DNA of 64,000 bases from Scyliorhinus canicula (GCF_902713615.1 NC_052158.1:144567862-144631861); one strand, 5' to 3'; positions 1,682 to 62,296 are shown, counted from the stretch's first letter. A program made the numbers and translations. Notes: a model not told the origin generated them from the letters alone.

Positions 1682-1861
1682 ATGTTTCTATGCTCTGGAA
1701 CCACTGCAAGATGTCTCGGTGTAATACTTCTTGGACTAGCCATTCTCTGTTTCTGTGTGAATGTATTGCTCTTCTTCCCAAATGGTGACACACGATATGC
1801 TAAGAAGAACGTATCATCAACCGTGTGGTACTTAGGAGGAGTTATTGGTTCTGGAATTTTG
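1682..1861 (+). CDS. TM4SF4-like: L6/TM4SF family gene A, coding exon 1 (60 aa; TM1, small extracellular loop, start of TM2)
   Basis: Encodes MFLCSGTTARCLG...NVLLFFPNGDT...VWYLGGVIGSGIL, matching the L6 family N-terminus (ARCxG...NxLLxFPxG...VW..GG..GSG). ATG context aaccATG, in-frame upstream stop at 1670, phase-0 donor TTG|gtaagt. Exact orthology unresolved. Confidence 0.93.
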
Positions 1862-11704: not shown

Positions 11705-13722
11705 GAAGATAGAATCACAGAATTGTTACAGAATGAGGCCATTTGGCCCTTCACATCTGCACCAGCTCTCTGAATGAACACCTCACCTATTGCCGTTCCC
11801 CTGCCTTCTCCCGGTAACCATGGAATTCTTGCTTTTTATATAACCGTCTAATTCCTTTTGGAAGCCTCGATTGAACCTGCCTTCACCACTCTCTCAGGCA
11901 ATACATTCCAAACTCCACCCACTTGCTGTGTAAAAATGTTTCTCCTCATCTGACTCCTCCTTCTTCTACTAATTATTTCAAATCTATGCCCTCTCATTCA
12001 CAAATGTTCACTAAGTGGGAACAGTTACTCCTATTTGCTCTCGACCGAACACTCTTGATTTTGTTTCTTTTATAAATTTGGAGTACACAATTATTTTTTT
12101 CCAATTAAGGGGCAATTTCGTGTGGCCAATCCACCCAACTACTGCGCCACCCCCCTCTTGATTTTGAATACCTCTATTAATTCTCCTTAGAAACTTATTT
12201 TCTCCAAGAAAAACAGTCCTTACTTCTCCAATCTATGTTCATAACCGAAGTTCCTCATCCATGGAACCACTTGTGAATCTTTTCTGCATCCCCTCCAATG
12301 CCTTCCCAGAACTAGATGCAATATTCTAGCTGAGGATAAACTAGTGACTTGTACAAATTCAACGGGCAGCACGGTAGCATGGTGGTTAGCATCAATGCTT
12401 CACAGCTCCAGGGTCCCAGGTTCGATTCCCGGCTGGGTCACTGTCTGTGCGGAGTCTGCACGTCCTCCCCGTGTGTGCGTGGGTTTCCTCCGGGTGCTCC
12501 GGTTTCCTCCCACAGTCCAAAGATGTGCGGGTTAGGTGGATTGCCCTTAGTGTCCTAAAAGATAAGGTTAGTGGGGGTTGTTGGGTTGCTGGTGTGGGGT
12601 GGATACGTGGGCTGGAATGGGGTGGTCATTGCTCGGCACAGCGTCGAGGGCCGAGGGGCCTGTTCTGTGCTGTACTGTTCTAATAATTGCCTTGCTGTAA
12701 TATTCCATGTCCCTATTAATAAAGCCCATGATACTGTATGCTTGGGCAGCATGGTGGCACAGTGGTTAGCATTGTTGCCTACGGCGCTGAGGACCCGGGT
12801 TCGAATCCCGGCCCTGGGTCACTGTCCGTGTGGAGTTTGCACATTCTCCCCGTGTCTGCATGGGTTTCACCCCCACAACCCAAAAAGATGTGCAGGGTAG
12901 GTGGATTGACCACACTAAATTTTGCCTTAATTGGAAAAAATAATTGGGTACTCTAAATTTATTTCAAAAAAGATACTGTATACTTTATTAACTTCTCTCC
13001 AGACCAGTCCTGCTGCTTTCAATGCAGGTCCCTCAGCTCTTGCACTCCCTTTCATGTTATACCCTGAACTTTATATTGTTCCTCCATGTTCATCCCACCA
13101 AAATGAGTGACTTCATATTCCTCTACATTGAACTTCATCTGCCACCTGTCTGCACATCTCACCAACTTGTCCATGAGCTTTTGAAGTTCTACACTGTCCT
13201 TCACTGAGTTCACAATGCTTCCAAGTGTGGTACCATCTACAAATTCCGAAATCGTGTGAAGGATACCAAGGTCCAGTTCATTGTTATATACCAGGAAAGG
13301 CAATGGTCGCTAAGCCGACCTCTGGGGAATTTCACTACAAACCTTCCCCCAAAAGATCCACTAGCCACGACTCTAATTCCTCTCACTCAGTCAAATCTGT
13401 ATCCATGTTGCTACTGTTCCCCTTGTTCCATGAGCCATAACTTTACTCATAAGTCTGTTGTGCGACACTGTATCAAAGGTCTTTTGGAAGTCCATGTGCG
13501 TCACATCAACAACATTGCCCTCAATAACCCTCTCCAATACCTCGTCAAAAAACTTCAGCAAGTTAGTTGAACTTTGATTTTCTCTTCAGAAATCGCTGCT
13601 GGTATTCCTTTAATTAACCCTTTGTCCATGTGACTTAATGTTTTTCCATAATTATTGTCTCTAAGAGTTTCCCTGCCACTGAAGTTAAACTGACTGGCCT
13701 GTAATTGCTGGGTTTATCTTTC
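11705..13722 (-). mobile_element. Old CR1-clade fragments with nested SINEs (12364-12682, 12744-12970)
   Basis: Degenerate RT motifs (SEFVDGTTLG, WQMKFNVEEYEVTHFG) and CR1-type 3' end. Confidence 0.75.
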
Positions 13723-13990
13723 AGTTGATAATTATAATTTATCTTAACCATAGGAAGGAGATTGCTCTGGTGTTGCTCTGGTGAACAGCCAGGTGAGGGG
13801 CTTCATTGGTAAAGACCTTTGGCGCCAGCCACTCACCCTCCTTACACCTTCAGCAATGAATTGTGTTTAGCAAAAGGAGGGTAAATTCTTCAAGTTCTCA
13901 GCAATAAACTACAAAGAAAAGAGTGGAGATGAATAATTGATAATGTGTAATGTAATGCAATGTTATTGTCTCTTTTTTTTACACCAATAG

Positions 13991-14842
13991 ATGATCTTCC
14001 CTGCATGGGTATTCTTGGAATTTTGGGATACAAATGATTGCACGGACTGCTGTGACTCCTGCCAATGCCCACCACTGTGCTGCCAATCCTGCCAATGCCA
14101 GCAATGCCCCGAATGTTTCTCCTGCGGTCCTTGCCCAACCTGCGACTGTCCATACTGCCGGGAATGCCAGACGTGTGAACCTTGCCCCGCCTGCGACTGC
14201 AGACCCTGCCGTGACTGCCCTCCATGCCAAGCCTGTGCCAACTGCGAGTGCCCGCGTTGCCGCGATTGCCAGATATGCAAACCCTGCACCACCTGCGAGT
14301 GCCCGAAATGCCGTGCCTGCGAGCAGTGCACGCCCTGCGAGTCCTGCGATTGCAAGCGCCTCTGTGAATGCCCGCCGTGCAAACCCTGTGAGACCTGTAA
14401 CTGCCAAAACTGCCGCGAGTGCCCAACCTGCAGACGCTGCCCCGCCTGTGAATGCAAACGGTGCAACTGCTGTCCCGACTGTAAATGCAGACCCTGCTGT
14501 GAATGCCCACCCTGCAGCTGCTCTCCTGACTGTAAATGCCCACCCTGCAGCTGCCCTCCCGACTGTAAATGCCCACCCTGCTGTAAATGCCCACCCTGCA
14601 GCTGCCCTCCCGCCTGTAAATGCCCACCCTGCAGCTGCCCTCCCGCCTGTAAATGCCCACCCTGCAGCTGCCCACCCTGCTGTGAATGCCCACCCTGCAG
14701 CTGCTGCCCCAACTGCGATTGCAAGACCTGCTGTGAGAACTTTTGGAAATGCTCACTCCTGTGTCAGTGCCTGGGTGCTGTTGGTGAAGCCTGTAAATGC
14801 CCAGAATCCTGTAGGTGCAAACCATGTATCAGAAATTTTCCG
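13991..14842 (+). CDS. TM4SF4-like: Gene A coding exon 2 (284 aa): end of TM2 plus a greatly expanded Cys-rich intracellular loop
   Basis: Acceptor tctttttttt acaccaatag|ATG and donor CCG|gtaagg, 852 nt, phase 0/0, no stops. Starts MIFPAWVFLEFWDTNDC (family MIFPALVFLGLKNNDCC) and ends CIRNFP (family CGKRFA). 98 Cys counted by hand. Confidence 0.9.
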
Positions 14843-15381
14843 GTAAGGAAGACAAGCAGAAAGTTTTATATTGCAATTGTTTAATGATAATTTGTATTTA
14901 TTTCCATCCATCTTTATTATTATCTGCTGAGATTGTGGGGAATTGACTGAGACTTTGACCCCTTCCAGTAGAATCTGTCAATGGATATTAAGATGTGCAC
15001 TTGGAAGCCGATATTCAATTTTCCCTTCCTCCCTGTGGAGAAGCATTTAGCTCTCCCCCTCACCATCATACAGTTGAGGCTGAGGGGATCTATGAGTTTC
15101 AGTACATCATCTTGGGGTTTCTATGGACCACGTTGATGTCCCTCTGGGTCTATTTCTGGTAATCATAGAACCAAACACTAACCATATAAGTTATGGCGCA
15201 AAGGTACCATTTGAACCATCGTCCCGATGTCCACATTTTGCTGTAGTTATAACACACTCCATTGCCTCAATCCCACCATATCCTTTCCTCAAATGTTAAA
15301 TTACTCTTCTCTTCAAAGGTACATGGCCTCTACTACTCCCAGAGGCAAAAGCATTCCATGAGGTACCACGTCACAGAATCG

Positions 15382-15980: not shown

Positions 15981-18900
15981 GACATTTTCCTAATGCCCTG
16001 TCGACTCTAACGTGTGACAATTTTTAATTGGAGATCGTTTGTCACAAATTCCCAGCCAGAGAAAATTTTAATTTTTTAATTTTACATAAATTTAGAGAAC
16101 CCAATTCATTTTTTTCCAATTAAGGGGCAATTCAACGTGGCCAATCCACCCACCCTGCACATCTGTGGGTTGTGGGGGCAAAACCCACGCAAACATGGGG
16201 AGAATGTGCAAACTCCACACGGACAGTGACCCAGAGCCGAGATCGAATCTGGGACCTCGGCGCCGTGAGGCAGCAGTGCTATCCAGTGCTGCCCTCCAGC
16301 CTGAGAAAATAACCTATCCCTATTCACCTTATCAACGTCCTTTGAATTTTAACAAATCCTACTTATTCTCCTCTTAACCTTCTCTGCTCCTGTGGAAATA
16401 ATTCTAATTGAAGTCTGTCGATACAAGCAGATTTTAGGCCTGGAATCAGCTGAGTGAAATCTTTAATGTTCTCTGTATAAGGGAATGCTCAAAATTGGAA
16501 AAATTGCTCAAACTGTGGCCTTGCAAAGTAATTATCATATCATAACTTTTTACACAGTGCCCCATTCAGGAAATACAAATTTCCTTTGTCCTTTTTGTGA
16601 ATTACATATTTGCACACCCACCTATTCATATGTATTCACATCCTTCAGCAACTTTACTCACACCTCTCCACATTAAATTGTGTCCGCTACCTCTTTAATT
16701 ATCTTGTTGACCTTTTTTTATGTCCTCCTGAAGTTATTTAAAGTTCTCCTGGCTATTTGCCATTTTTGTCATTCACACAAGGACATAGAAATTTGGAGCA
16801 GGAATTAAACCATTCAGCCCCTCAAGCCAACTCCGCTAGTCAATGAGGTCATGGTTGATCTGATGTGACCTTTAGTCCACTTTCCTCCCTGACCCCAGTA
16901 AAGCTTGACTTACTTGCCAATGAAAAATCTGTCTAACTCAGCCTTGAGTATATTCAAAGATCACATCTAATTTGTCTAAACATCAGTGAGTATAGGCCCA
17001 ACCTGCTCAACCTTTCCTCATCTGGCAACCTCTTCATGCCACGAATCAGCCTTGTGCATCTTCTCAAAACTGCTTCCAACATCGGTAAGTCCCTCCTTAA
17101 GAAAGGTGGTTTAGTGGCATTGTCACTGGGGTAGTAATCCAGAAACCCAGGGTGAAGACCAAGAAATAAGTCACAGAAAAGACTGATAGGTACGGGAGTT
17201 GGTTTCCAAAGATCTTGGTGAGCGTTCTGAATGAGGGATCTTTACCCAGAATTGTACTGTGAAAATATTTGCTGCAGAGATCAAGCAAAGCAAGAAAAGA
17301 GATCCAAACTCATAAGGGGAGTGGTGAGAAAGGCAAAGAGAGAGATGCACAAGGGACGGGGGTATAATAATATGGTGGTTCTGCTGCTGGACTCATGGTC
17401 CGGATGCCTGAGGTAATGATTCAGAGATACAAGTCAAATCTCCACTGTAGCAACAAGTGAATTTAAATTCAATTACTGGATTACCGTTAAATCACCATCT
17501 GGTTCACTAATGTCCTTTAGAGAAGGATATTTGTCATCCTTACCTAGTCTGTCTCGAGCAAACAGCCACTCTTAACTGAAGTGGCCTCGAAGGTATTCAG
17601 TGCTATTCTAGACGGTGACTCGTCAGCACTTTCTCAAGGGATGGCCATAAATATTGGCTTTGCTGGCAAAAGAAGCATAGAACTGTAGAACCACTGTGGG
17701 TCGGAGAATCGCCGGGGGGGGACGGGGACGGCATGAATCCCGCCCCGCCGCTCCGACGCCGGCTGCCGAATTCTCCGGCGCCGGATTTTGGGCAGGGTCG
17801 GGGATTGCGCCGCACCGGTCGGGGGCCGTTGGCAGCGGCCTCCCCGGCAACTCTCCACTCGGGGAAACAAGTGACAATGTCGACCATGTCTCGGCCCCTC
17901 ACAGTTAGGTGGACCTCAATCCAGTCACCCCTCAGCCACCTCTGTTGTAAAGAGAACAGCCCATGCTCTGTGAATGAACAGAAATGATGAACTGAAAAGA
18001 GCGCATTGAATATACCTTAAGTAGAAGGATTGACCACTCAGCCCTCAATTGCGTTATGGCTGCTCTGCATTCTAAACATGGACCTGTTTTGGTTCCAATA
18101 ACCTTGCTGAACAAAAGTCTATCTACCCAGTTTAACAATTTCTTTTTTTTAATACTAAATTTAGAGTACCCAATTATTTTTTTCCAATTAAGGGGAAATT
18201 TAGTGTGGGCAATCCACCTAACCTGCGCATCTTTGGGTTTTGGGGGTGAAACCCACGCAGACGCAGGGAGAATGTGCAAACTCTACAGGGACAGTGACCT
18301 GGGCCCGATTTCGAACCTGGGTATTCAGCGCCGTGAGGCAGCAGTGATAACCACTGCGCCACCGTGCCGTCCTGGCTTCACCCTTGAATGACCCGTCTCT
18401 AGTTTTAACCTCATAAAATGTTTACCTTTGCTGTAACCAAGTGATGGTAAAGGCTGAGACAAACAGAAATAGAGCATTAGAAATGCTGCACCAACGAAAG
18501 GTGTGATAAGATAAAAAAAACAAATCGGAAAATTGTGTTAAAAGTGCGGAAATATTATGAAAGAGTCACCTCCAAGTTCTCATGACAAGCCGCTTGCCTA
18601 GTGGTTTCAGTCAACTTCATTCTGTGACTCCTTGCCCCCTTCACTTATTTTATTCATGGCAATGCCTCTACCAATTAGAGTCCATTTGCCAATCAATCAA
18701 CACTCTATTTTCATGCAACACAAAGTTGAGGGCGGGTTTCTCCGTCCCGCCGCGCCAGATTTCTGGTTCAGCACGCCATCGGGATTCTCCGTTTCGCTGG
18801 CTGGTCAATGGGGTTTCCCATTGTATGACATCTCCACACCCTCGGAAACCTGTGAGCTGCAGGCAAAACGGAACATCTTGACGGCGGAGAATTCAGCCCG

Positions 18901-61528: not shown

Positions 61529-61705
61529 ATGTGCTACGGGAAATGTGCCAGGTGCCTGGGCATCACCCTCATCCCTCTGGCCCTTACCTGCATCATTTTG
61601 AACACTCTGCTTTTCTTCCCGAATGGAGAGACGGGCTACAACACTCCGGAGCAACTGGCGGAGACCGTCTGGTGTTTCAGTGGGATAATAGGATCCGGAT
61701 TGCTG
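61529..61705 (+). CDS. TM4SF1-like: L6/TM4SF family gene B, coding exon 1 (59 aa)
   Basis: Encodes MCYGKCARCLGITLIPLALTCIILNTLLFFPNGETGY...VWCFSGIIGSGLL; MCYGKCARC and FPNGET match TM4SF1. Kozak gccATG, phase-0 donor CTG|gtaaaa. Orthology (TM4SF1 versus TM4SF4 or another paralog) unresolved. Confidence 0.93.
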
Positions 61706-62206: not shown

Positions 62207-62296
62207 ATGGTGTTCCCGATTCTGGTGTTTATGGGAATGGAAAATAACGATTGCTGTGGCTGCTGTGGAAATGAAAACTGCGGCAAACGATTTGCG
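62207..62296 (+). CDS. TM4SF1-like: Gene B coding exon 2 (30 aa, canonical short Cys loop); the gene continues beyond the window
   Basis: cag|ATG...GCG|gtaaga, 90 nt. Encodes MVFPILVFMGMENNDCCGCCGNENCGKRFA, the hallmark L6 CCGCCG loop. Confidence 0.93.

What the first reader, a model, noticed from the sequence alone, without database searches (positions are those of the whole stretch)
14090..14446. Seven 17-aa repeats with near-invariant Cys spacing but diverged spacers: signature of selection on the cysteines
Units are CQCQQCPECFSCGPCPT, CDCPYCRECQTCEPCPA, CDCRPCRDCPPCQACAN, CECPRCRDCQICKPCTT, CECPKCRACEQCTPCES, CDCKRLCECPPCKPCET and CNCQNCRECPTCRRCPA. The pattern is C-x-C-xx-C-xx-C-xx-C-xx-C-xx (51 bp, 6 Cys; unit 6 shifts one Cys by one position). 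Spacer codons differ heavily between units, yet the TGY codons persist with no stop or frameshift although TGC/TGT is one substitution from TGA. This argues for an old, translated, constrained module rather than a neutral satellite. The 6-Cys unit may be a repeating metal-cluster or solenoid fold (inference).
Basis: partly seen in the sequence, partly recalled or inferred. Interest (0 to 1): 0.75.

Follow-up and report, generated by a model that had tools for sequence, protein, structure and literature searches.

The report
Shark membrane protein with 98-cysteine loop
The seven cysteine repeats are real and lie in one expressed exon that gives a catshark four-pass membrane protein (TM4SF/L6 family) a 270-residue, 98-cysteine loop on the inner face of the membrane; sharks and rays have kept it since they diverged, and it may be a membrane-anchored metal binder.

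Summary
Positions 14090-14446 hold seven 51-bp units with 41 of 42 cysteines in register.

- **Where they lie.** The units sit in one 852-bp exon (13991-14842, + strand). This is exon 2 of a five-exon TM4SF/L6-family gene (1682-35163).
- **Expression.** Transcript contigs from three studies join this exon exactly to exons 1 and 3.
- **What changed.** The exon encodes the TM2-TM3 loop, which is cytosolic in this family. In the neighbouring paralogue the same exon has 30 codons; here it has 284, with 98 Cys and 50 Pro.
- **Age.** Orthologues in a sawshark, a skate, an electric ray and a stingray carry the same loop. Units match one-to-one across species, so the array predates the shark/ray split.
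- **Selection (catshark vs skate).** dN/dS is 0.055 at Cys columns, 0.45 at spacers and 0.07 in the transmembrane exons.
- **Recent growth.** Catshark and stingray each added their own younger repeats.

Function is inferred. The most likely reading is a membrane-tethered, metallothionein-like thiolate domain (about 0.45). The rivals are multi-site palmitoylation and disulfide cross-linking. AlphaFold gave no confident fold.

Public annotation calls the orthologues "keratin-associated protein-like", which the tests here do not support. I found no paper on them. Another note of this scan (s1-213826, same window) reached the same reading.

The parts
1682..1861 (+). Exon 1: start codon, TM1, small extracellular loop with an N-V-S sequon, first half of TM2 (60 codons, ends in phase 0, GTAAGT donor)
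   Evidence: tblastn 90% identity to skate P0003 residues 1-61. Sequence and donor. Pfam L6_membrane 61.6 bits, profile positions 2-59. Its last 30 bases appear as the loose end joined to 13990/13991 in transcript contigs.
13991..14842 (+). Exon 2: end of TM2, then the Cys-rich cytosolic loop (284 codons, phase 0/0, 98 Cys, 50 Pro)
   Evidence: AG acceptor at 13989-13990 and GTAAGG donor at 14843. Contigs of runs X1, X2 and X6 stop exactly at these ends and continue into exons 1 and 3, with intron depth 0 in X1 and X2. Composition.
14090..14446 (+). The finding: seven old 17-aa (51-bp) units of six Cys each
   Evidence: Units are one-to-one orthologous in four species.
14447..14704 (+). Younger Cys-Pro sub-array of 11-aa (33-bp) units, absent from the other four species' loops
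   Evidence: TRF period 33, 92-93% matches. These columns are gapped in the sawshark, skate and electric ray, and the stingray loop has a different 19-aa array instead. The X2 contig skips 14490-14674 (183 bp, in frame), which is either an allele or an assembly collapse.
14705..14842 (+). Conserved C-terminal part of the loop, up to the boundary with TM3
   Evidence: Invariant columns across the four species (CC.NF, C.CLGA, C.CP..C, R.F) in alignment A1.
25521..25657 (+). Exon 3: TM3 and the start of the large extracellular loop, with the first conserved loop Cys (GPLC)
   Evidence: tblastn 85-90% identity to orthologues. Splice sites. Pfam L6_membrane 40.1 bits, profile positions 88-130. Its first 30 bases are the loose end behind 14842 in X1 and X6.
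25924..26104 (+). Exon 4: rest of the large extracellular loop (second conserved Cys), TM4 and the start of the C-terminal tail
   Evidence: tblastn 88% identity to P0003 residues 318-377. Splice sites. Pfam L6_membrane 66.2 bits, profile positions 135-191.
35146..35163 (+). Exon 5 (predicted): last five codons (GYGPM) and the stop
   Evidence: Pattern search after a pyrimidine-rich AG acceptor. It matches the skate's last exon (GYTPM-stop at L001:35941) and the sawshark's tail. It is not confirmed by reads.
61529..61705 (+). Context: exon 1 of a neighbouring canonical TM4SF gene
   Evidence: tblastn. Pfam L6_membrane 76.1 bits. Sequence.
62207..62296 (+). Context: exon 2 of that neighbour. 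It is the homologous exon in its short form (30 codons, phase 0/0, five Cys in a DCCGCCGNENC motif)
   Evidence: Sequence and splice sites. 74% identical to teleost TM4SF4 over this exon. Aligns to the start of the Cys-rich exon with 11 of 27 identities, E=3e-4.

Best explanation
The seven repeats are the oldest part of exon 2 of a five-exon gene of the TM4SF/L6 four-transmembrane family. The gene is closest to TM4SF4. Exon 2 encodes the loop between TM2 and TM3, which faces the cytosol in this family. In canonical members the exon has about 30 codons and holds a short Cys cluster. In the ancestor of sharks and rays it grew by internal tandem duplication. It has kept growing in single lineages, and the catshark now has 284 codons with 98 cysteines, spaced almost entirely as C-x-C and C-x-x-C. 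These steps are shown: the gene structure, transcription and splicing, the age of the array, and strong purifying selection on the cysteines with weaker selection on the spacers. The function is inferred. Because the loop sits in the reducing cytosol directly under the membrane, I think it most likely works as a membrane-tethered, metallothionein-like thiolate domain. Such a domain would bind soft metal ions (Zn, Cu, Cd) or buffer redox stress at the membrane. At metallothionein's ratio of about 20 Cys to 7 divalent ions, it could hold on the order of 30 ions. The identity part has confidence about 0.95. The figure below is for the metal-binding mechanism.
For: Gene and exon: exons 1, 3 and 4 each pass Pfam L6_membrane on their own (61.6, 40.1 and 66.2 bits against a cut-off of 30). 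They cover profile positions 2-59 and 88-191, so the Cys exon replaces positions 60-87. Orthologues P0001-P0004 carry the same split L6 domain. Expression: contigs in three studies end at 13990/13991 and 14842 and continue with exon 1 and exon 3 sequence. Topology: the literature places the TM2-TM3 loop and both termini of TM4SF proteins in the cytosol (PMC13539156, PMC7000776). AlphaFold on skate P0003 gives four long helices flanking the loop. An N-x-S sequon sits in the small outer loop and both Cys of the large outer loop are kept. Origin: the neighbouring paralogue's exon 2 has the same phases but 30 codons, and it aligns to the start of the Cys-rich exon. Selection: dN/dS is 0.055 at Cys columns, 0.45 at spacers, 0.17-0.21 over the loop and 0.074 in the TM exons. 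46 of 47 catshark Cys are kept in skate. Age: orthologous units are 51% identical at non-Cys sites, against 17.5% for paralogous units. Metallothionein-like features: 36% Cys, no His and 5 aromatic residues in 272. Of the 97 gaps between successive Cys in the exon, 79 are one or two residues. The only PDB sequence hit is a snail metallothionein, and it is not significant (E=0.21). The catshark and the stingray expanded the loop independently with different units (11 and 19 aa) but kept the same dense Cys spacing. That suggests selection for thiol number rather than for one rigid fold.
Against: No metal-binding test was possible. No Pfam metallothionein family matches, even at E<=10. The loop is far larger and much richer in Pro (18%) than classical metallothioneins, which resembles structural Cys/Pro proteins. 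AlphaFold gives no confident structure (pLDDT 25-34 across the loop; 47 for a three-unit peptide). That result is uninformative rather than supportive. The electric ray lost 11 of the 36 Cys compared in the first six units, so not every Cys is essential. The tissue of expression is unknown, because run identities were coded. dS is near saturation (1.1-1.5), so the dN/dS values are approximate.
Confidence: 0.45

Rival explanations
1. The loop is a multi-site S-palmitoylation platform. Many of its cysteines would carry fatty acids, plastering it onto the inner leaflet and organising a lipid or protein microdomain. This would exaggerate what the short Cys cluster of ordinary TM4SF proteins does.
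For: TM4SF5 is reported to be palmitoylated at cysteines near the cytosolic ends of its TM helices (PMC7000776; PMC13539156). The expansion grew out of exactly that juxtamembrane Cys cluster.
Against: Most of the 98 Cys lie far from the membrane boundary in sequence. The regular C-x-C and C-x-x-C spacing, with conserved acidic, basic and Pro spacers, is not a known acylation motif. Acylating residues that close together would be sterically hard (inference).
Confidence: 0.2
2. The loop is a disulfide cross-linking structural domain, like keratin-associated proteins or the sperm mitochondrial capsule protein. In a specialised, terminally differentiating cell it would oxidise and lock the membrane to a rigid protein matrix.
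For: The Cys and Pro content (36% and 18%) resembles such proteins. NCBI's automatic names for the orthologues are 'keratin-associated protein 4-9/5-5/10-11-like'.
Against: No Pfam keratin-associated family matches at E<=10. Adjacent Cys-Cys pairs, typical of those proteins (my own knowledge), account for only 8 of 97 gaps between successive Cys. The gene has five exons and four TM helices. The cytosol is reducing in ordinary cells.
Confidence: 0.2
3. The loop is a tolerated low-complexity expansion with no function of its own. The repeat would be slippage-prone DNA in a loop that does not matter, and Cys is kept only because the ancestral seed was Cys-rich.
For: The sub-arrays are lineage-specific. 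One RNA contig has a 183-bp in-frame length difference. The electric ray has lost 11 Cys.
Against: dN/dS is 0.055 at Cys columns while dS exceeds 1. Units are conserved one-to-one across sharks and rays with 51% identity at non-Cys sites. The unusual Cys shift in unit 6 is kept in all four species aligned.
Confidence: 0.05

Closest known systems
TM4SF4 (il-TMP) and the TM4SF1/4/18 group of the L6 membrane family (Pfam PF05805)
   Same: It has the same four-TM architecture, exon phases, small outer loop and two-Cys large outer loop. It lies next to another TM4SF gene. On a tree of the TM parts, the cartilaginous-fish clade (support 100/100) groups with bony-vertebrate TM4SF4 at 88/85. The nearest named hits are teleost TM4SF4.
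   Different: The cytosolic loop has about 270 residues and 98 Cys, instead of about 20 residues with five or six Cys. The clade sits on a long branch of 0.86 changes per column. No canonical member among the best 150 hits of an exhaustive search carries such a loop.
Metallothioneins, including long multi-domain forms such as the Littorina protein in PDB 5ML1
   Same: Cys content is about one third. C-x-C and C-x-x-C spacing dominates. There is no His and aromatic residues are nearly absent. No stable fold is predicted without metal. 5ML1 is the only PDB sequence hit.
   Different: The hit is not significant (E=0.21) and no Pfam metallothionein family matches. The loop is four or more times longer, is Pro-rich, and is embedded in a membrane protein rather than soluble. 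Metal binding was not tested.
Mammalian keratin-associated proteins (the name the orthologues carry in RefSeq)
   Same: Both are rich in Cys and Pro and evolve by tandem repeats.
   Different: No Pfam match. The Cys spacing differs, with few adjacent Cys-Cys pairs. The gene is multi-exon and carries an L6 membrane domain. The name is an artefact of composition.
His- or Cys-rich cytosolic metal-binding loops and tails of metal transporters (ZnT/ZIP loops, P1B-ATPase tails; my own knowledge, not tested here)
   Same: The concept is the same: a metal-ligand-rich, probably disordered cytosolic segment attached to a membrane protein.
   Different: TM4SF proteins are not known to be transporters. 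There is no sequence relationship. The ligand density here is far higher.

Membership tests
L6 membrane / TM4SF family (PF05805) | Pfam L6_membrane match above the gathering score | tested here: met
   Window exons 1, 3 and 4 score 61.6, 40.1 and 66.2 bits (cut-off 30) at profile positions 2-59, 88-130 and 135-191. Orthologues score 107-169 bits.
L6 membrane / TM4SF family (PF05805) | Four transmembrane helices with a small and a large outer loop | tested here: met
   AlphaFold on skate orthologue P0003 gives helices 7-31, 46-73, 269-298 and 337-369, at low confidence (pLDDT 50-57). The catshark TM exons are about 90% identical to it in protein.
L6 membrane / TM4SF family (PF05805) | Two conserved cysteines in the large extracellular loop (C118 and C145 of TM4SF5, PMC13539156) | tested here: met
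   The Cys in GPLC (exon 3) and in KCLEP (exon 4) are present in catshark and invariant in the orthologues.
L6 membrane / TM4SF family (PF05805) | Short TM2-TM3 intracellular loop (about 20-30 residues) | tested here: not met
   The loop exon has 284 codons, against 30 in the neighbouring paralogue. This is the variant feature. Pfam membership does not depend on it.
TM4SF4 orthology group | Groups with named TM4SF4 on a tree and shares synteny with other TM4SF genes | tested here: inconclusive
   It groups with TM4SF4 at 88/85 support on 197 columns and 24 chosen rows, with a midpoint root only. A second TM4SF gene lies 26 kb downstream. I could not show whether elasmobranchs also have a separate canonical TM4SF4.
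Metallothionein | Sequence-family match (Pfam metallothionein families) | tested here: not met
   No Pfam family at E<=10. The PDB metallothionein 5ML1 matches only at E=0.21.
Metallothionein | About 30% Cys in C-x-C, C-x-x-C or CC motifs, with no His and almost no aromatic residues | tested here: met
   36% Cys, 0 His and 5 aromatic residues in 272. Of the 97 gaps between successive Cys, 29 are one residue and 50 are two residues.
Metallothionein | Binds metal ions in thiolate clusters | not testable with these tools
   This needs recombinant protein with ICP-MS, native MS or UV titration.
Keratin-associated proteins | Pfam Keratin_B2-type match, adjacent Cys-Cys repeats, and a soluble protein from a small gene | tested here: not met
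   No Pfam match. Only 8 of 97 gaps between successive Cys are zero. The gene has five exons and an L6 domain.

The most novel reading that the evidence does not exclude
Elasmobranchs turned a tetraspan scaffold protein (TM4SF4-type) into a membrane-anchored giant metallothionein. One 98-Cys cytosolic loop would store or buffer on the order of 30 Zn, Cu or Cd ions directly under the membrane. Its capacity would be tuned in each lineage by adding or losing repeats. This would be a new way for vertebrates to handle metals or redox stress at a membrane.
Probability: 0.35. Interest if true: 0.8.

Novelty: new variant of a known kind. Interest (0 to 1): 0.62.

Why it matters
TM4SF/L6 proteins are studied mainly as cancer-related membrane scaffolds, and their short cytosolic Cys cluster is treated as a palmitoylation site. 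Here the same loop has been enlarged about ninefold into one of the most Cys-dense segments I know of in a vertebrate membrane protein. It has been kept under purifying selection in both sharks and rays.

If it binds metal, it is a previously undescribed membrane-tethered metallothionein, relevant to metal handling in long-lived, metal-accumulating fishes. If it is acylated or cross-linked instead, it is an extreme natural experiment on what the TM4SF loop does.

It also corrects a systematic misannotation, since the orthologues are filed as 'keratin-associated protein-like'. And it is a clean example of selection acting on a residue type across a diverging tandem array.

Tried and rejected
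- **Family and look-alike searches on the exon.** Pfam found nothing, even at E<=10. The ESM Atlas look-alike search gave no usable hit. The PDB sequence search gave one non-significant metallothionein hit and nothing for the full skate protein.
- **Structure prediction.** AlphaFold on the skate protein had mean pLDDT 38.7 and no structure in the loop. On a three-unit peptide with 14 aligned repeat segments it had pLDDT 47. I did not run fold searches on models this poor.
- **Orthologous DNA.** Only the skate locus could be fetched. The Narcine and Callorhinchus proteins are not on record, and the Hypanus file is too large.
- **Chimaera loop.** The two Callorhinchus models (191 and 195 aa) lack the Cys loop. 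After exon 1 they continue with residues that look like a read-through donor site, so I cannot tell whether chimaeras lack the expansion.
- **Tissue of expression.** Run identities were coded. The one raw poly-A run that I laid (X14) had no reads on the exon.
- **Literature.** Six searches found no paper on a Cys-rich-loop TM4SF, or on these 'keratin-associated-like' shark genes.
- **Irrelevant calls.** A bacterial promoter/terminator scan does not apply to this eukaryotic locus. Rfam found nothing in the window.
- **Rejected reading.** A non-coding satellite or dispersed repeat: no other copy lies in the window, the exon is spliced, and dN/dS is well below 1.
- Exons were searched one by one by reference, and full-length orthologues stood in for the whole protein.

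Full report
**1. Observation**

Six columns are cysteine in every unit. The exception is unit 6, where the third Cys sits one position later. Between units, Cys codons are 88% identical at the nucleotide level and spacer codons 48%. At third positions the figures are 73% and 39%.

The six TGT codons among 41 are scattered over units and columns, as expected for independent synonymous changes. Tandem Repeats Finder does not detect this part as an array, so the copies are old. It does detect a much younger 33-bp array just downstream, at 14493-14704, with 92-93% matches.

First, the spacers are not free: column 2 is acidic or polar, column 7 mostly Arg, column 8 acidic and column 14 mostly Pro. 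Second, the absence of stops proves little, because five of the six frames carry long ORFs across this low-complexity stretch.

**2. What it is**

The repeats lie in a single 852-bp exon, 13991-14842. It has an AG acceptor after a pyrimidine tract and a GTAAGG donor. The exon encodes 284 residues with 98 Cys and 50 Pro. No other Cys-dense coding stretch of this kind lies in the window.

A word-indexed protein search found three relatives, in a sawshark, an electric ray and a skate. All three carry Pfam L6_membrane (the TM4SF family), split by the Cys-rich stretch. Mapping them back on the window gives a five-exon gene:

| Exon | Coordinates | Content |
|---|---|---|
| 1 | 1682-1861 | Start, TM1, small outer loop, first half of TM2 |
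| 2 | 13991-14842 | End of TM2 and the Cys-rich loop |
| 3 | 25521-25657 | TM3 and the start of the large outer loop |
| 4 | 25924-26104 | Rest of the large outer loop, TM4 |
| 5 | 35146-35163 | Predicted last five codons and stop |

All splice sites are canonical. Exons 1, 3 and 4 each pass the Pfam gathering score on their own. They cover profile positions 2-59 and 88-191, so exon 2 stands where profile positions 60-87 would be.

As the operators require, I did not submit the joined 455-residue model to any search or fold. Exons were used by reference, and full-length orthologues stood in for the whole protein.

**3. Expression**

Assembled contigs from three public runs of three different studies cover the exon exactly from 13990/13991 to 14842. 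Beyond those points they continue with the last 30 bases of exon 1 and the first 30 bases of exon 3. Intron depth is zero in two of the runs, and about 5 against about 480 in the third. The exon is therefore transcribed and spliced as modelled.

One contig skips 183 bp (61 codons, in frame) inside the young sub-array. This could be an allele or an assembly collapse. A raw poly-A run (X14) had no reads on the exon. Tissue identities were hidden.

**4. Origin of the exon**

About 26 kb downstream of the gene's last exon, a second TM4SF gene begins at 61529. Its exon 2 (62207-62296) has the same phases (0/0) but only 30 codons, with the usual short Cys cluster. That short exon aligns to the start of the Cys-rich exon: 11 of 27 identities, E=3e-4 for the single comparison. 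Both exons end shortly after an Arg-x-Phe motif (R-F-A in the neighbour, R-N-F in the Cys-rich exon). The Cys-rich exon is thus the ordinary loop exon, expanded from inside about ninefold.

**5. Topology**

Published descriptions of TM4SF5 and the L6 family place both termini and the TM2-TM3 loop in the cytosol. The two other loops face outside, and the larger one carries two conserved cysteines (PMC13539156; PMC7000776). The catshark gene keeps those two cysteines and has an N-V-S sequon in the small outer loop.

AlphaFold on the skate orthologue gave four long helices flanking the loop, though at low confidence. I therefore take the 98-Cys loop to be cytosolic. This is inferred from family membership, not shown directly.

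**6. Age and selection**

The four loops align residue by residue through units 2-7, including the odd Cys shift in unit 6. Orthologous units share 63% identity (51% at non-Cys sites). Paralogous units within a species share 40% (17.5% at non-Cys sites). The seven-unit array therefore already existed in the common ancestor of sharks and rays, and it has not been homogenised since. From my own knowledge, that split is at least about 250 million years old.

I compared the catshark with the skate genomic locus by Nei-Gojobori counts:

| Part compared | dN/dS |
|---|---|
| Whole aligned loop | 0.17 (dS 1.47) |
| Well-aligned first 147 columns | 0.21 |
| Columns with Cys | 0.055 |
| Spacer columns | 0.45 |
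| Transmembrane exons | 0.074 |

Of 47 catshark Cys in the well-aligned part, 46 are Cys in skate, and seven of those differ by a TGC/TGT change. dS is near saturation, so the ratios are approximate. The contrast between Cys and spacer columns is nevertheless large.

Over the first six units, 36 catshark Cys can be compared (unit 7 differs in length in the orthologues). The skate keeps 35, the sawshark 32 and the electric ray only 25, with the ray's losses concentrated in units 1, 2 and 5. Individual cysteines are therefore dispensable.

**7. Distribution**

An exhaustive HMMER search of 1.84 billion cluster representatives with the skate protein found 373 relatives. Of the hits I read (the fifteen family members fetched, which include the longest of the best 150, plus three more), only one carries a Cys-rich loop. 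It is a stingray protein, named 'keratin-associated protein 5-5-like'. The others had the short loop, were tandem fusions, or carried unrelated extensions.

A profile search added no further species. The next named relatives were teleost TM4SF4. Two chimaera (Callorhinchus) models, 71-80% identical in the TM parts, lack the loop. They look like gene models that read through the exon 1 donor, so the state in chimaeras is open.

On a tree of 24 chosen family members (197 columns, loop columns dropped by the filling filter, midpoint root for drawing only), the cartilaginous-fish clade has 100/100 support. It sits on a long branch and groups with TM4SF4 at 88/85. The rows were picked from named representatives, and about 130 listed hits were left out.

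Loops hold 61-98 Cys (27-36%) in the five species. The stingray has its own five-fold 19-residue expansion, and the catshark its own 11-residue expansion.

**8. How it most likely works**

The following is shown: a four-TM anchor carries a long cytosolic segment, and selection on that segment acts mainly on thiol positions. The segment keeps being lengthened with different unit sizes but the same C-x-C and C-x-x-C density.

The mechanism is inferred. In a reducing compartment, the property such a segment offers is a very high local concentration of thiolates, which is what metallothioneins use to bind Zn, Cu and Cd. The composition fits that reading: 36% Cys, no His, almost no aromatic residues, and net charge near zero. 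So do the lack of a predicted fold and the single, non-significant PDB hit to a snail metallothionein. None of this is a test.

I put the alternatives as follows:
- Membrane-tethered metallothionein-like domain: about 0.45.
- Massive palmitoylation: about 0.2. The ancestral cluster is a reported acylation site.
- Disulfide cross-linking in a specialised cell: about 0.2.
- Functionless expansion: about 0.05, given the dN/dS values.

The repeat unit is 17, 19 or 11 residues in different sub-arrays, and AlphaFold sees no regular structure.

**9. Comparison with what is known, and novelty**

By every sequence test run here, the gene is a member of the L6/TM4SF family. It differs in the one feature that is otherwise uniform in the family, the short cytosolic loop. 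It is not a keratin-associated protein: there is no Pfam match, the Cys spacing is different, and the gene is multi-exon and encodes a membrane protein. It is not a metallothionein by sequence family, although it resembles one in composition.

Six literature searches found nothing on it. Another first-stage note of this scan on the same window (s1-213826) proposed the same reading. I reached it independently before seeing that note, so it is not independent evidence. I rate the finding a new variant of a known kind, with interest 0.62.

Noticed in passing
window:6300-8724: An 18-bp minisatellite (unit GGAAGGGAGACTGACCAG) of about 133 copies with 87% matches lies in intron 1 of the gene. It explains the strong GC and AT skew of that segment.
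   Followed up: no
window:15580-15770 (similar ORF-like pieces near 12344-12560, 12738-12956 and 16092-16327): A short interspersed repeat in the introns has summed k-mer depth of 40,000-320,000 in the same RNA runs, with many variant letters. It is probably a very abundant, transcribed SINE-like element. Rfam reports no family for it.
   Followed up: partly
window:61529-62296: A second, canonical TM4SF gene starts about 26 kb downstream of the Cys-loop gene's last exon, on the same strand. Only its first two exons are in the window. Exon 1 is closest to a stingray TM4SF1-like protein (60%) and exon 2 to teleost TM4SF4 (74%), so its identity within the TM4SF1/4/18 group is unresolved.
   Followed up: partly
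window:14490-14674: One transcript contig (run X2) lacks 183 bp (61 codons, in frame) inside the young repeat sub-array. This is either a length allele or a de Bruijn assembly collapse. Contigs of the other runs break in the same region.
   Followed up: no
window:1711-1785: The N-terminus of the electric ray 'isoform X2' (P0002 residues 1-25) matches exon 1 read in a different frame (68% identity). That predicted isoform would lack TM1 and is probably an annotation artefact.
   Followed up: no
L001:1-4301 (skate): In the skate, the upstream neighbour on the opposite strand is a gamma-glutamyl transpeptidase gene, which belongs to glutathione metabolism. The catshark window starts only 1.7 kb before exon 1, so I could not check the same neighbour there.
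   Followed up: no
P0141 (380 aa, source not looked up): Another TM4SF relative from the exhaustive search carries an insertion of roughly 180 aa that is not Cys-rich, at the same TM2-TM3 loop position. This could be intron retention in a gene model, or it could mean the loop tolerates insertions generally.
   Followed up: no
window:13890-14884, both strands: Five of the six reading frames carry long ORFs (142-311 aa) across the exon, because the repeat is poor in stop-forming triplets. ORF length alone is therefore no evidence of coding here.
   Followed up: yes
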